Source: Macrostomum lignano (Eukaryota). Taken from it: a DNA stretch of 60,993 nt. Position numbers and translations under genes: made by a program. Below, piece by piece: positions 53,132 through 57,592 of this stretch (its first letter is position 1; each line of letters begins with the position of its first letter). Below the pieces are notes generated by a model. That model did no database searches, was not told where the DNA came from, and was given only the letters and a program-made list of their open reading frames with translations. The stretch is taken from assembly GCA_002269645.1 (NCBI GenBank), contig NIVC01004088.1:1-60993 (forward strand), read 5' to 3'.

Positions 53132-56100
53132 CGGTGATCTTGTGTGCGTGCTTTCAGCTTGATTGGCTGCGGCAAGCAAGCTCGAAAGAGCTCGCTTCGC
53201 TCGCTCTTTCTCGCTATCTACTATCCATAGCCAGGACCTGCACCGGAGCGGTTACGAAAATTAGATTTCTCGGTAGTTGCACGTACTCTTTTGCACTACT
53301 TGAGTAGTCTGATTTTCGTTCGGCATGGCTGGTTCCAGCAGGTAGTTCCTCTGGATAAAAGCGCTTACCGCGCCCATTGGCTTTCCAACTGCCTTAATCG
53401 TTTCCGGTGATCTTGTGTGCGTGCTTTCAGCTTGATTGGCTGCGGCAAGCAAGCTCGAAAGAGCTCGCTTCGCTCGCTCTTTCTCGCTATCTACTATCCA
53501 TAGCCAGGACCTGCACCGGAGCGGTTACGAAAATTAGATTTCTCGGTAGTTGCACGTACTCTTTTGCACTACTTGAGTAGTCTGATTTTCGTTCGGCATG
53601 GCTGGTTCCAGCAGGTAGTTCCTCTGGATAAAAGCGCTTACCGCGCCCATTGGCTTTCCAGCTGCCTTAATCGTTTCCGGTGATCTTGTGTGCGTGCTTT
53701 CAGCTTGATTGGCTGCGGCAAGCAAGCTCGAAAGAGCTCGCTTCGCTCGCTCTTTCTCGCTATCTACTATCCATAGCCAGGACCTGCACCGGAGCGGTTA
53801 CGAAAATTAGATTTCTCGGTAGTTGCACGTACTCTTTTGCACTACTTGAGTAGTCTGATTTTCGTTCGGCATGGCTGGTTCCAGCAGGTAGTTCCTCTGG
53901 ATAAAAGCGCTTACCGCGCCCATTGGCTTTCCAGCTGCCTTAATCGTTTCCGGTGATCTTGTGTGCGTGCTTTCAGCTTGATTGGCTGCGGCAAGCAAGC
54001 TCGAAAGAGCTCGCTTCGCTCGCTCTTTCTCGCTATCTACTATCCATAGCCAGGACCTGCACCGGAGCGGTTACGAAAATTAGATTTCTCGGTAGTTGCA
54101 CGTACTCTTTTGCACTACTTGAGTAGTCTGATTTTCGTTCGGCATGGCTGGTTCCAGCAGGTAGTTCCTCTGGATAAAAGCGCTTACCGCGCCCATTGGC
54201 TTTCCAGCTGCCTTAATCGTTTCCGGTGATCTTGTGTGCGTGCTTTCAGCTTGATTGGCTGCGGCAAGCAAGCTCGAAAGAGCTCGCTTCGCTCGCTCTT
54301 TCTCGCTATCTACTATCCATAGCCAGGACCTGCACCGGAGCGGTTACGAAAATTAGATTTCTCGGTAGTTGCACGTACTCTTTTGCACTACTTGAGTAGT
54401 CTGATTTTCGTTCGGCATGGCTGGTTCCAGCAGGTAGTTCCTCTGGATAAAAGCGCTTACCGCGCCCATTGGCTTTCCAGCTGCCTTAATCGTTTCCGGT
54501 GATCTTGTGTGCGTGCTTTCAGCTTGATTGGCTGCGGCAAGCAAGCTCGAAAGAGCTCGCTTCGCTCGCTCTTTCTCGCTATCTACTATCATAGCCAGGA
54601 CCTGCACCGGAGCGGTTACGAAAATTAGATTTCTCGGTAGTTGCACGTACTCTTTTGCACTACTTGAGTAGTCTGATTTTCGTTCGGCATGGCTGGTTCC
54701 AGCAGGTAGTTCCTCTGGATAAAAGCGCTTACCGCGCCCATTGGCTTTCCAGCTGCCTTAATCGTTTCCGGTGATCTTGTGTGCGTGCTTTCAGCTTGAT
54801 TGGCTGCGGCAAGCAAGCTCGAAAGAGCTCGCTTCGCTCGCTCTTTCTCGCTATCTACTATCCATAGCCAGGACCTGCACCGGAGCGGTTACGAAAATTA
54901 GATTTCTCGGTAGTTGCACGTACTCTTTTGCACTACTTGAGTAGTCTGATTTTCGTTCGGCATGGCTGGTTCCAGCAGGTAGTTCCTCTGGATAAAAGCG
55001 CTTACCGCGCCCATTGGCTTTCCAGCTGCCTTAATCGTTTCCGGTGATCTTGTGTGCGTGCTTTCAGCTTGATTGGCTGCGGCAAGCAAGCTCGAAAGAG
55101 CTCGCTTCGCTCGCTCTTTCTCGCTATCTACTATCCATAGCCAGGACCTGCACCGGAGCGGTTACGAAAATTAGATTTCTCGGTAGTTGCACGTACTCTT
55201 TTGCACTACTTGAGTAGTCTGATTTTCGTTCGGCATGGCTGGTTCCAGCAGGTAGTTCCTCTGGATAAAAGCGCTTACCGCGCCCATTGGCTTTCCAGCT
55301 GCCTTAATCGTTTCCGGTGATCTTGTGTGCGTGCTTTCAGCTTGATTGGCTGCGGCAAGCAAGCTCGAAAGAGCTCGCTTCGCTCGCTCTTTCTCGCTAT
55401 CTACTATCCATAGCCAGGACCTGCACCGGAGCGGTTACGAAAATTAGATTTCTCGGTAGTTGCACGTACTCTTTTGCACTACTTGAGTAGTCTGATTTTC
55501 GTTCGGCATGGCTGGTTCCAGCAGGTAGTTCCTCTGGATAAAAGCGCTTACCGCGCCCATTGGCTTTCCAGCTGCCTTAATCGTTTCCGGTGATCTTGTG
55601 TGCGTGCTTTCAGCTTGATTGGCTGCGGCAAGCAAGCTCGAAAGAGCTCGCTTCGCTCGCTCTTTCTCGCTATCTACTATCCATAGCCAGGACCTGCACC
55701 GGAGCGGTTACGAAAATTAGATTTCTCGGTAGTTGCACGTACTCTTTTGCACTACTTGAGTAGTCTGATTTTCGTTCGGCATGGCTGGTTCCAGCAGGTA
55801 GTTCCTCTGGATAAAAGCGCTTACCGCGCCCATTGGCTTTCCAGCTGCCTTAATCGTTTCCGGTGATCTTGTGTGCGTGCTTTCAGCTTGATTGGCTGCG
55901 GCAAGCAAGCTCGAAAGAGCTCGCTTCGCTCGCTCTTTCTCGCTATCTACTATCCATAGCCAGGACCTGCACCGGAGCGGTTACGAAAATTAGATTTCTC
56001 GGTAGTTGCACGTACTCTTTTGCACTACTTGAGTAGTCTGATTTTCGTTCGGCATGGCTGGTTCCAGCAGGTAGTTCCTCTGGATAAAAGCGCTTACCGC

Positions 56101-57592
56101 GCCCATTGGCTTTCCAGCTGCCTTAATCGTTTCCGGTGATCTTGTGTGCGTGCTTTCAGCTTGATTGGCTGCGGCAAGCAAGCTCGAAAGAGCTCGCTTC
56201 GCTCGCTCTTTCTCGCTATCTACTATCCATAGCCAGGACCTGCACCGGAGCGGTTACGAAAATTAGATTTCTCGGTAGTTGCACGTACTCTTTTGCACTA
56301 CTTGAGTAGTCTGATTTTCGTTCGGCATGGCTGGTTCCAGCAGGTAGTTCCTCTGGATAAAAGCGCTTACCGCGCCCATTGGCTTTCCAGCTGCCTTAAT
56401 CGTTTCCGGTGATCTTGTGTGCGTGCTTTCAGCTTGATTGGCTGCGGCAAGCAAGCTCGAAAGAGCTCGCTTCGCTCGCTCTTTCTCGCTATCTACTATC
56501 CATAGCCAGGACCTGCACCGGAGCGGTTACGAAAATTAGATTTCTCGGTAGTTGCACGTACTCTTTTGCACTACTTGAGTAGTCTGATTTTCGTTCGGCA
56601 TGGCTGGTTCCAGCAGGTAGTTCCTCTGGATAAAAGCGCTTACCGCGCCCATTGGCTTTCCAGCTGCCTTAATCGTTTCCGGTGATCTTGTGTGCGTGCT
56701 TTCAGCTTGATTGGCTGCGGCAAGCAAGCTCGAAAGAGCTCGCTTCGCTCGCTCTTTCTCGCTATCTACTATCCATAGCCAGGACCTGCACCGGAGCGGT
56801 TACGAAAATTAGATTTCTCGGTAGTTGCACGTACTCTTTTGCACTACTTGAGTAGTCTGATTTTCGTTCGGCATGGCTGGTTCCAGCAGGTAGTTCCTCT
56901 GGATAAAAGCGCTTACCGCGCCCATTGGCTTTCCAGCTGCCTTAATCGTTTCCGGTGATCTTGTGTGCGTGCTTTCAGCTTGATTGGCTGCGGCAAGCAA
57001 GCTCGAAAGAGCTCGCTTCGCTCGCTCTTTCTCGCTATCTACTATCCATAGCCAGGACCTGCACCGGAGCGGTTACGAAAATTAGATTTCTCGGTAGTTG
57101 CACGTACTCTTTTGCACTACTTGAGTAGTCTGATTTTCGTTCGGCATGGCTGGTTCCAGCAGGTAGTTCCTCTGGATAAAAGCGCTTACCGCGCCCATTG
57201 GCTTTCCAGCTGCCTTAATCGTTTCCGGTGATCTTGTGTGCGTGCTTTCAGCTTGATTGGCTGCGGCAAGCAAGCTCGAAAGAGCTCGCTTCGCTCGCTC
57301 TTTCTCGCTATCTACTATCCATAGCCAGGACCTGCACCGGAGCGGTTACGAAAATTAGATTTCTCGGTAGTTGCACGTACTCTTTTGCACTACTTGAGTA
57401 GTCTGATTTTCGTTCGGCATGGCTGGTTCCAGCAGGTAGTTCCTCTGGATAAAAGCGCTTACCGCGCCCATTGGCTTTCCAGCTGCCTTAATCGTTTCCG
57501 GTGATCTTGTGTGCGTGCTTTCAGCTTGATTGGCTGCGGCAAGCAAGCTCGAAAGAGCTCGCTTCGCTCGCTCTTTCTCGCTATCTACTATC
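53132..57592. repeat. Tandem array of a 273-bp unit, about 16.3 copies, nearly identical, flanked by (TATC)n
   Basis: The ORF track recurs every 273 bp (53261, 53534 ... 57355). Only two differences were noticed: G>A at about 53388 and a 1-nt deletion at about 54590. Confidence 0.97.

What the first reader, a model, noticed from the sequence alone, without database searches (positions are those of the whole stretch)
53132..57592. Homogeneous 16x array of a 273-nt, highly self-complementary unit: candidate retrozyme/viroid-like circular RNA without a canonical hammerhead
Seen: about 16.3 head-to-tail copies with only two differences noticed. One end is an arbitrary breakpoint (53132); the other stops exactly where the unit's CTATCTACTATC merges into the flanking (TATC)n. 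The unit folds extensively by eye: a 66-nt rod ACGAAAATTAGAT-ttCTCG-GTAGtTGCA...TGCA-CTAC-tTGAG-taGTCTGATTTTCGT (53254-53319); a GAAA-capped hairpin AAGCaAGCTC-GAAA-GAGCTcGCTT (53174-53197); GGCAtgGCTGG/CCAGCTGCC enclosing TCCAG/CTGGA; and a long-range CACCGGA/TCCGGTG pair. Known: metazoan retrozymes are tandem arrays of short non-coding units carrying type I hammerheads, give rise to circular RNAs and are thought to be mobilised by PLEs. Inference: this may be a rolling-circle-type cDNA of a small structured RNA. I find no CUGANGA/GAAA core on either strand, so it would need another or unknown processing motif. The minus strand has a GG-UGCAGGU-CC hairpin (about 53235-53245) reminiscent of the twister-sister P4 loop, but the rest of that consensus is not evident.
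Basis: partly seen in the sequence, partly recalled or inferred. Interest (0 to 1): 0.85.

Follow-up and report, generated by a model that had tools for sequence, protein, structure and literature searches.

The report
Young 273-bp satellite array in microsatellite
A nearly perfect 16-copy tandem array of a 273-bp non-coding unit sits inside a long (TATC)n microsatellite next to a decayed Penelope-like retrotransposon; no known self-cleaving RNA motif was found in it, so it is most likely a very young ordinary satellite, with a retrotransposon-made copy of a small RNA as an untested minority possibility.

Summary
The array spans 53132-57592: 16 full 273-nt copies plus 94 nt, with only two differences (G>A at 53388; a 1-nt deletion at 54590).

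The interpretation cannot be settled here:
- No Rfam family matches the unit.
- My relaxed hammerhead scan finds nothing on either strand. The same scan does find the minimal hammerhead in the tail of the neighbouring Penelope-like element (PLE), so the absence looks real.
- Folding beats shuffles (z about -4). It is only top-2% against GC-matched 273-nt pieces of the same window.
- No other copy was found in the window or in any reachable collection, so covariation and dispersal could not be tested.

New context: the array is flanked on both sides by (TATC)n. Its left end cuts the unit arbitrarily. Its right end lies at the unit's own CTATCTACTATC motif. An old, 5'-truncated PLE lies in the same microsatellite in the same orientation. 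That geometry fits round-and-round copying joined by microhomology, from either a DNA or an RNA template.

Best call: an ordinary young DNA satellite (about 0.5). Main rival: a PLE-made retro-copy (about 0.25).

The parts
51851..53131 (+). Left flanking (TATC)n microsatellite, about 320 units, 99% pure. It carries a degenerate left end with the variant motif CTGTCTGTCTATCTATCCATC at 51872.
53132..57592 (+). Tandem array of the 273-nt unit: 16 full copies plus a 94-nt partial copy. The left end is at an arbitrary point of the unit. The right end is at the unit's CTATCTACTATC motif.
53405..53677 (+). Reference copy of the unit (GC 51%). It contains no ORF with a Pfam match. The longest stop-free frame is 87 codons, on the minus strand.
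53254..53319 (.). 66-nt imperfect palindrome (long hairpin) of copy 1, repeated in every unit. As a DNA inverted repeat it forms on both strands.
53388..53388 (+). Variant 1: G>A at unit position 257 in copy 1. It breaks a G-C pair of the predicted GGCUGG/CCAGCU helix.
54590..54590 (+). Variant 2: 1-nt deletion in the CC at unit positions 94-95 in copy 6. This is a homopolymer indel and could be a sequencing error.
57593..58108 (+). (TATC)n between the array and the PLE, about 125 pure units. It ends TGTCTGTC TATCTATC CATCCAT immediately before the PLE.
58109..60271 (+). 5'-truncated, frameshifted Penelope-like element. It has RT motifs, a CX4CxxC linker and a GIY-YIG (YVGETGG) domain, followed by a 3' tail with a 163-nt x2 duplication (59767-60089). 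The nearest relative, P0001, is 72% identical.
60169..60208 (+). PLE-type minimal type I hammerhead motif in the PLE tail: ACC CUGACGA A GACC-cuguuua-GGUC GAAA AUUUC|GGUUC. It served as the positive control for the hammerhead scan.
60272..60965 (+). (TATC)n 3' of the PLE. It ends with the same variant motif as the tract before the PLE (60919), followed by CCATC(TATC)4 and unique flank.

Best explanation
This is a very young, non-coding satellite-type array made and kept at the DNA level. It has no RNA life cycle of its own.

Shown:
- A 273-bp unit is repeated 16.3 times almost without change.
- The array lies inside a long (TATC)n tract, next to an iGluR-like gene on the minus strand. Whether it sits upstream of that gene or in one of its introns is undetermined.
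- Every unit ends in a small TATC-like tract (CTATCTACTATC), and the array stops exactly there.
- No known ribozyme motif was found on either strand.

Inferred:
- One short burst of amplification multiplied the unit. The burst could have been unequal exchange or replication slippage between TATC tracts on either side of a 273-bp segment. Alternatively, an excised 273-bp DNA circle was copied by rolling circle, and the product was rejoined to the microsatellite by microhomology at the TATC motif. The other end would then be joined at an arbitrary point of the unit.
- The self-complementarity comes from several short DNA inverted repeats. These make both strands fold about equally well and need no RNA function.
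For: - Array anatomy and near-identity of the copies.
- TATC tracts on both sides, with the array ending at the unit's own TATC-like motif.
- The window is extremely prone to DNA-level tandem amplification. It holds more than 20 independent arrays with periods from 3 to 163 nt, including a 163-nt x2 duplication inside the PLE tail. (TATC)n tracts make up about 8.5% of the window outside the array.
- No Rfam family matches at gathering score or at E<=10 on three units.
- No hammerhead is found with one mismatch allowed, although the same scan finds the PLE's minimal hammerhead.
- The two strands fold about equally well (z -4.0 and -3.7), as expected of DNA palindromes.
- The fold is only top-2% against local genomic background.
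- There is no significant similarity to the PLE tail.
- GC is 51%, whereas animal retrozymes are described as below 45-50% (PMC7229834).
- No coding potential.
Against: - In-place unequal exchange predicts that the array starts at a unit boundary next to the left TATC tract. Instead, the leftmost copy is cut at an arbitrary point, so an extra deletion is needed.
- Sixteen copies with two singleton differences fit a single round-and-round copying event better than many rounds of exchange.
- A PLE, a retroelement family with a published bias for microsatellite targets (PMC8557442), sits in the same tract. It has the same orientation and the same geometry: left end truncated, right end joined to (TATC)n.
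- Unit length and 69% predicted pairing are in the range reported for animal retrozyme RNAs (PMC7229834).
- Nothing here directly shows a DNA rather than an RNA template.
Confidence: 0.5

Rival explanations
1. The array is a PLE-made retro-copy: retrozyme-like, but without a hammerhead.

The template would be an RNA of the unit, either a 273-nt circle or a long multimeric transcript of a master array elsewhere. An active PLE copied it. The PLE endonuclease nicked the (GATA)n bottom strand. The 3'-OH annealed to the RNA's CUAUCUACUAUC motif. Reverse transcription ran about 16 times round the circle, or along the multimer. The cDNA was then joined upstream at an arbitrary point, as in 5' truncation.

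If the template was a circle, some unknown cleavage-and-ligation route must have made it.
For: - The geometry matches the neighbouring PLE: same strand, left end truncated, right end joined to (TATC)n.
- This PLE carries the CX2-5CxxC-type linker that has been linked to microsatellite targeting (PMC8557442).
- Relatives of this PLE also abut simple repeats 3' of the ORF: L001 (CTCTGT)n, L003 (CTGCTTC)12, L005 (CCCTAA)n.
- A random insertion would land in (TATC)n only about 8.5% of the time.
- The near-identity of the copies fits rolling-circle copying of one template.
- Unit size and predicted pairing resemble non-LTR retrozymes (PMC7229834).
- A weak 13-of-14-nt match, TGTGCGTG-TTTCA, links the unit to the last 25 nt of the PLE tail; 6 of 200 shuffles score as well.
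Against: - No hammerhead or other Rfam ribozyme is present, while the PLE's own minimal hammerhead is easily found.
- Animal retrozymes are reported to derive from PLE terminal repeats (bioRxiv 10.64898/2026.07.22.740005). This unit shows no convincing similarity to the PLE tail.
- The adjacent PLE is old (frameshifts and stops) and the array is young, so they are separate events. Sharing an orientation is a 50% coincidence.
- No second locus, transcript or circle is available.
- A DNA-synthesis repair event primed from the same side gives the same geometry.
Confidence: 0.25
2. Assembly artefact. The array exists, but its copy number and near-perfect identity come from consensus polishing or mis-joining of long reads in a region dominated by kilobase-long microsatellites.
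For: - Fourteen full copies plus the 94-nt partial copy are identical to the reference copy.
- One of the two differences is a homopolymer 1-nt indel typical of long-read error.
- The array is embedded between 1.3-kb and 0.5-kb pure microsatellites that are hard to assemble.
Against: - The junctions on both sides are clean and in register.
- A 4.5-kb array is well within single long reads.
- Nothing in the sequence itself signals a mis-join.
- An artefact would change the copy number, not the nature of the unit.
Confidence: 0.08
3. Tandem gene array for an undescribed small structured RNA, such as a spliced-leader-like or snRNA-like RNA. Each unit would carry its own promoter, and concerted evolution would keep the copies identical.
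For: - Short tandem units of a few hundred bp encoding small RNAs are known in animals (general knowledge).
- The unit is structured and homogeneous.
Against: - No Rfam family (snRNA, SL RNA, 5S, tRNA and the rest) matches, even at E<=10.
- ARAGORN finds no tRNA.
- The only AUUUUCG-type tracts lie inside the long hairpin stem and do not fit the Sm consensus RAU3-6GR (direct reading).
- T4 runs occur on both strands within the unit (direct reading).
- The array is a single array bounded by a microsatellite and cut at an arbitrary point.
Confidence: 0.07
4. Internal tandem repeat of a non-autonomous Helitron/Helentron (HINE or 'pearl'-type) element. Such elements carry satellite-like arrays next to a tetranucleotide microsatellite.
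For: The association of a satellite-like array with a 4-nt microsatellite recalls the Cg_HINE layout (PMC7492417).
Against: - HINEs have a left flank with subTIR, IR and a short, eroded microsatellite. A variable spacer follows, then the array, then a conserved 60-bp right flank with subTIR and palindrome (PMC7492417).
- Here, long pure (TATC)n touches both ends of the array directly.
- Beyond the microsatellites lie a host exon-like region on the left and a PLE on the right, not HINE flanks.
Confidence: 0.03

Closest known systems
Animal non-LTR retrozymes (tandem 150-450-bp repeats with type I hammerheads, expressed as circRNAs, thought to be mobilised by PLEs; PMC7229834; bioRxiv 10.64898/2026.07.22.740005)
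   Same: - Head-to-tail array of a short non-coding unit in the right size range.
- Highly self-paired predicted RNA.
- PLEs are present in the genome and immediately adjacent.
- The end geometry is compatible with rolling-circle reverse transcription.
   Different: - No hammerhead, canonical or minimal, on either strand.
- No detectable similarity to the PLE terminal region.
- GC is 51% rather than below 45-50%.
- Only one locus is known.
- Expression is unknown.
Ordinary satellite DNA spread or amplified by unequal exchange, or by eccDNA rolling-circle copying with microhomology-mediated reinsertion (general knowledge of satellite DNA biology)
   Same: - Tandem, non-coding and homogeneous.
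- Contains short dyad symmetries.
- One junction lies at a microhomology.
- Sits in a region full of other tandem arrays.
   Different: - Unusually pure for 16 copies.
- Lodged wholly within one microsatellite.
- Shares target tract and orientation with a retroelement.
Penelope-like elements with minimal hammerheads and a microsatellite insertion bias (PMC4209133, PMC8557442)
   Same: The neighbouring element at 58109-60271 is a member. It has RT plus a C-terminal GIY-YIG domain and a CX4CxxC linker. Its minimal hammerhead has the extra nucleotide after A9, the G10.1-C11.1 pair and a palindromic helix III. It is inserted in a microsatellite.
   Different: The 273-nt unit encodes nothing and shares no clear sequence with the PLE.
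Helentron-associated HINE/'pearl' elements carrying satellite-like arrays next to a microsatellite (PMC7492417)
   Same: A satellite-like array adjacent to a tetranucleotide microsatellite.
   Different: - No left or right flank modules, subTIRs or 3' palindrome.
- The microsatellite is long, pure and on both sides.

Membership tests
Animal non-LTR retrozyme | Head-to-tail tandem repeats of a 150-450-bp non-coding unit | tested here: met
   273 nt x 16.3 copies. No Pfam match in any frame.
Animal non-LTR retrozyme | A type I hammerhead ribozyme (canonical or minimal) in each unit | tested here: not met
   Rfam gives 0 hits at gathering score and only RAGATH-8 at E about 1 on three units. My scan for CUGANGA-helix II-GAAA, with up to one core mismatch and both strands, gives 0 hits. 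It recovers the PLE tail motif in the window and in L001. The PLE tail motif is the only exact-core motif (no mismatch allowed) in the whole window.
Animal non-LTR retrozyme | Sequence kinship with the terminal (pLTR) region of a PLE | tested here: inconclusive
   Against the tail of the adjacent PLE and its closest relative, the best local match is 13 of 14 nt, and 6 of 200 shuffles score as well. The 5' part of this PLE family and other PLE families of the genome were not available.
Animal non-LTR retrozyme | PLEs present in the same genome | tested here: met
   PLE at 58109-60271. A second PLE-like RT remnant at about 8037-9500 on the minus strand.
Animal non-LTR retrozyme | [quoted passage not shown] | not testable with these tools
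   No transcriptome data are available.
Animal non-LTR retrozyme | Multiple dispersed loci in the genome | not testable with these tools
   No other copy in the 61-kb window. The source genome is not searchable. There are no matches in the metagenome, viral, GTDB or protein collections.
Viroid-like / ribozyme-bearing circular RNA (any known self-cleaving class) | A hairpin, HDV-like, twister, twister-sister, pistol, hatchet or other catalogued ribozyme motif | tested here: not met
   No Rfam family hit at E<=10 on three consecutive units, both strands. A loose HDV-like descriptor gives as many hits in shuffles (mean 32, maximum 80) as in the unit (52 and 9), so it is uninformative.
Twister-sister ribozyme | Match to the family's consensus sequence and structure | tested here: not met
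   No hit in the Rfam E-value search. The cited GG-UGCAGGU-CC element has only a 2-bp stem (direct reading).
Helentron HINE / 'pearl' element | Left flank (subTIR, IR, short microsatellite, spacer) and a conserved 60-bp right flank with subTIR and palindrome around the array | tested here: not met
   (TATC)n abuts both ends of the array directly. Outside lie a host exon-like region and a PLE. Criteria are from PMC7492417.
Satellite DNA (ordinary tandem repeat) | Non-coding head-to-tail array homogenised at the DNA level, with no mobility or RNA function required | tested here: met
   Array anatomy. No coding potential. Many other arrays lie in the same window. This is a default category, so meeting it excludes nothing.
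Small-RNA gene array (SL RNA, snRNA, 5S, tRNA) | Match to a known small-RNA family in each unit | tested here: not met
   Rfam gives no hit. ARAGORN gives no hit.

The most novel reading that the evidence does not exclude
The unit is the DNA copy of a small, highly paired RNA that a Penelope-like element copies by rolling-circle reverse transcription. That would make it an animal 'retrozyme' that has replaced the hammerhead with an undescribed self-cleaving or host-dependent circularisation motif. It would be inserted into (TATC)n by priming on its own CUAUCUACUAUC tract.
Probability: 0.08. Interest if true: 0.85.

Novelty: new member of a known kind. Interest (0 to 1): 0.35.

Why it matters
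If the array is only a young satellite, its value is modest. It would be a clean snapshot of a satellite at birth inside a microsatellite. Its end structure points to round-and-round copying plus microhomology joining, and it sits in a genome region unusually rich in tandem repeats.

If the template was RNA, two things would follow. PLEs would be shown to mobilise hammerhead-less passengers. The unit might also hide a new RNA-processing motif, which would widen the retrozyme concept.

The locus also provides a well-preserved example of a PLE-type minimal hammerhead that Rfam models miss. It further shows an apparently very long target duplication of a PLE inside a microsatellite.

Tried and rejected
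1. Known ribozymes:
   - Rfam at gathering score on the whole window found nothing.
   - Rfam at E<=10 on three units found only a noise hit.
   - Rfam at E<=10 on the PLE region also found nothing relevant, which shows Rfam misses minimal PLE hammerheads.
   - I therefore wrote my own hammerhead scan. It finds no motif in the unit and gives positive controls in the PLE tails.
2. A loose HDV-like descriptor gives as many hits in shuffles as in the unit, so I dropped it as uninformative.
3. Other copies of the unit were sought in several ways:
   - blastn with word size 7 against the window: none.
   - Exact look-up of the unit's 63-aa and 57-aa ORFs: not on record.
   - DNA scans of JGI metagenomes (two patterns), viral contigs and GTDB genomes: only a chance 22-mer in a GC-62% bacterial contig.
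   - Protein-database search with the 87-codon stop-free frame: nothing.
   - Full-text search for three unit substrings in the literature: nothing.
4. Organism identification from a PTP exon gave a best hit of 40% identity, so the organism is unidentified. No close relative appears in the protein collection. It is an animal, with sacsin, rhodopsin-type GPCR, PTP, iGluR and PLE sequences.
5. Kinship of the unit with the PLE tail rests on a marginal 13-of-14-nt match only.
6. Coding potential: no Pfam match in any frame.
7. The Helentron/HINE layout was rejected on anatomy (PMC7492417).
8. An SL-RNA or snRNA reading was rejected: no Rfam hit and no proper Sm site.
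Full report
**1. The observation**

Tandem Repeats Finder reports one array at 53132-57592: period 273, 16.3 copies, 99% matches, no indels, score 8908. Anchoring every copy on its first 15 nt gives 17 starts spaced 273 nt apart, except one 272-nt interval.

- There are 16 full copies plus a 94-nt partial copy.
- Fourteen full copies and the partial copy are identical to the reference copy 53405-53677.
- Copy 1 has G>A at unit position 257 (window 53388).
- Copy 6 has lost one C of a CC at unit positions 94-95 (window 54590).

The listed hairpins exist. The GAAA-capped hairpin at 53174-53197 competes with an alternative pairing (GAAAGAGC/GCUCUUUC), and the minimum-energy fold prefers the alternative.

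**2. How unusual is the fold?**

As RNA, the plus strand folds at -99.2 kcal/mol and the minus strand at -92.4 kcal/mol. Neither is matched by any of 200 dinucleotide shuffles (z -4.0 and -3.7). Folded as a circle, the values are -98.3 kcal/mol (69% paired) and -89.6 kcal/mol (62% paired).

I also compared the unit with 277 non-repeat 273-nt pieces of the same window, corrected for GC. Against that background the unit is at z -2.2, and 5 of 277 pieces do as well. The self-complementarity is real but not extreme.

Both strands fold about equally well, and the helices correspond to DNA inverted repeats. The signal is therefore what DNA palindromes give and does not by itself point to an RNA.

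**3. Ribozyme tests**

- Rfam 15 (4227 families) gives no hit at gathering score in the whole window.
- At E<=10 on three consecutive units, which covers all phases and both strands, it gives only RAGATH-8 at E about 1 (12 bits against an 86.7-bit threshold). That is noise.
- The same E-value search on the PLE region (58000-60993) found no hammerhead either, although a PLE-type minimal hammerhead is visible there. Rfam alone is therefore not a sufficient negative.

I wrote a scan for CUGANGA, a helix II of at least 3 bp (with or without one extra 5' nucleotide) and GAAA, allowing one core mismatch.

- It finds nothing on either strand of the tandem unit.
- It finds the motif in the PLE tail at 60172, and the homologous motif in the closest PLE relative, L001.
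- With no mismatch allowed, that site is the only one in the whole window. Shuffled windows give 0.35 sites on average.

A loose HDV-like descriptor gave as many solutions in shuffles as in the unit, so I discarded it.

**4.

The array is flanked on both sides by (TATC)n: 320 units on the left (51851-53132) and about 125 pure units on the right (57593-58108).

Directly after the right tract comes a Penelope-like element on the plus strand (58109-60271).

- It starts inside the RT domain, so it is 5'-truncated.
- It has several frameshifts and stops.
- It carries a CX4CxxC linker and a GIY-YIG motif (YVGETGG).
- Its tail contains a 163-nt x2 duplication.
- Its stitched RT matches 1458 PLE proteins. 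The best, P0001, is 72% identical. Most others are about 45% identical, and the named ones among them are mostly from fishes.

The tail carries ACC-CUGACGA-A-GACC(cuguuua)GGUC-GAAA-AUUUC|GGUUC. This has the hallmarks described for PLE minimal hammerheads (PMC4209133):

- an extra nucleotide between A9 and G10.1;
- a G10.1-C11.1 pair;
- a palindromic helix III.

The block is the best-conserved part of the tail in the alignment with L001. There, helix II carries a compensatory A-U to G-C change.

After the PLE comes another (TATC)n tract (60272-60965). The 21-nt variant motif CTGTCTGTCTATCTATCCATC occurs only three times in the window, at 51872, 58088 and 60919. The copies at 58088 and 60919 continue identically through CATCCAT. 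The first then meets the PLE, and the second meets the unique flank. I read this as a long duplication of the microsatellite end, made when the PLE inserted. If so, the microsatellite predates the PLE.

On the minus strand, an iGluR-like gene (Lig_chan) has exon-like ORFs between about 47.5 and 51.85 kb. The whole complex lies upstream of that gene or in one of its introns.

**5. What the ends say**

The left end of the array joins (TATC)n to unit position 1-2 with one shared base. The right end lies exactly at the unit's CTATCTACTATC, which continues as (TATC)n.

This is the geometry expected if a bottom-strand 3' end of the (GATA)n tract annealed to the unit's TATC-like tract. It would then have been extended leftwards many times round a 273-nt template, and the product rejoined upstream at an arbitrary point.

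The template could be RNA or DNA. With RNA, this is target-primed reverse transcription by a PLE on a circle or on a multimeric transcript. With DNA, it is repair synthesis on an extrachromosomal circle or an ectopic array. The sequence alone cannot separate the two.

In-place unequal exchange between TATC tracts on either side of a 273-bp segment would also explain why each unit ends in a small TATC-like tract. It needs an extra deletion to explain the truncated leftmost copy.

**6. Weighing**

For a DNA-level satellite:
- The window holds more than 20 independent tandem arrays of many periods, so local DNA-level amplification is rampant.
- No ribozyme was found.
- There is no clear kinship to the PLE tail. 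The best match is 13 of 14 nt, and 6 of 200 shuffles score as well.
- The fold is only moderately unusual.
- GC is 51%.

For a PLE-made copy:
- PLEs are reported to prefer microsatellite targets (PMC8557442).
- Relatives of this PLE also abut simple repeats 3' of the ORF.
- (TATC)n covers only about 8.5% of the window, yet both the PLE and the array lie in it with the same orientation and end geometry.
- Sixteen near-identical copies suit a single rolling-circle event.
- Size and pairing match animal retrozymes (PMC7229834).

The adjacent PLE is old and the array is young, so they are separate events in any case.

I put about 0.5 on a DNA-level satellite and 0.25 on a PLE/RT-made copy. The remainder is split among assembly artefact, unknown small-RNA gene array and Helentron-type element.

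**7. Comparison with known families**

The array works like, and may have been made like, a non-LTR retrozyme. It fails that family's defining test, a hammerhead in each unit, and shows no clear pLTR kinship. I therefore do not file it there.

It does not fit the HINE/'pearl' layout (PMC7492417). It fits the default category of satellite DNA.

**8. Limits**

No second copy of the unit could be found anywhere I could search. The source organism is an animal with no close relative in the protein collection. Covariation, dispersal, transcription and circularity therefore remain untested. The decisive experiments are listed separately.

Noticed in passing
window 60169-60208 (+); L001 about 1870-1910: PLE-type minimal hammerhead in the tail of the degraded PLE. 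It has an extra A after A9, a G10.1-C11.1 pair and a palindromic AAAUUU at helix III. The block is conserved in the closest relative, with a compensatory A-U to G-C change in helix II. Rfam did not report it even at E<=10.
   Followed up: yes
window 58088-58111 and 60919-60942 (also 51872): The same microsatellite variant motif (CTGTCTGTCTATCTATCCATCCAT) lies immediately before the PLE and near the end of the (TATC)n tract after it. This looks like a very long target duplication of the microsatellite end made by the PLE insertion. A related copy lies at the far left end of the tract (51872).
   Followed up: partly
window 59767-60089: 163-nt x2 tandem duplication (97% identity) covering the end of the PLE ORF and the start of its 3' tail.
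   Followed up: no
window about 8037-9500 (-); also 9628-10608 (+) and 14249-14992 (-): A second, more distant PLE-like RT remnant lies on the minus strand. Two further RVT_1-positive ORFs of unassigned type are also present, surrounded by minisatellites.
   Followed up: partly
whole window, e.g. 22229-23050, 34151-35650, 40711-40975, 50028-50644, 15506-16698: Tandem repeats are extraordinarily dense, with more than 20 arrays in 61 kb. They include five (TATC)n/(TAGA)n tracts of 0.5-1.5 kb at 97-99% purity, one of them in the gap (probably an intron) between GPCR-like coding stretches. Others are (TGAC)66 at 100%, (ACT)205, and a 40-nt x30 array at 95%.
   Followed up: no
L001 1960-2194; L003 6213-6295; L005 4521-4611: Relatives of the PLE also end next to simple repeats: (CTCTGT)n-like, (CTGCTTC)12 and telomere-like (CCCTAA)n. 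This is consistent with the published microsatellite bias of PLEs.
   Followed up: partly
window about 48400-48520 (-): tRNA-like sequence with A-box and B-box-like motifs between iGluR-like exon-like ORFs, probably the head of a tRNA-derived SINE. Neither ARAGORN nor Rfam calls it.
   Followed up: no
window 257-6433 (-): A run of long ORFs (822, 504 and 426 aa) with Sacsin-domain matches. Together with the PTP exon (best outside identity 40%), they suggest an animal lineage with no close relative in the protein collection.
   Followed up: partly
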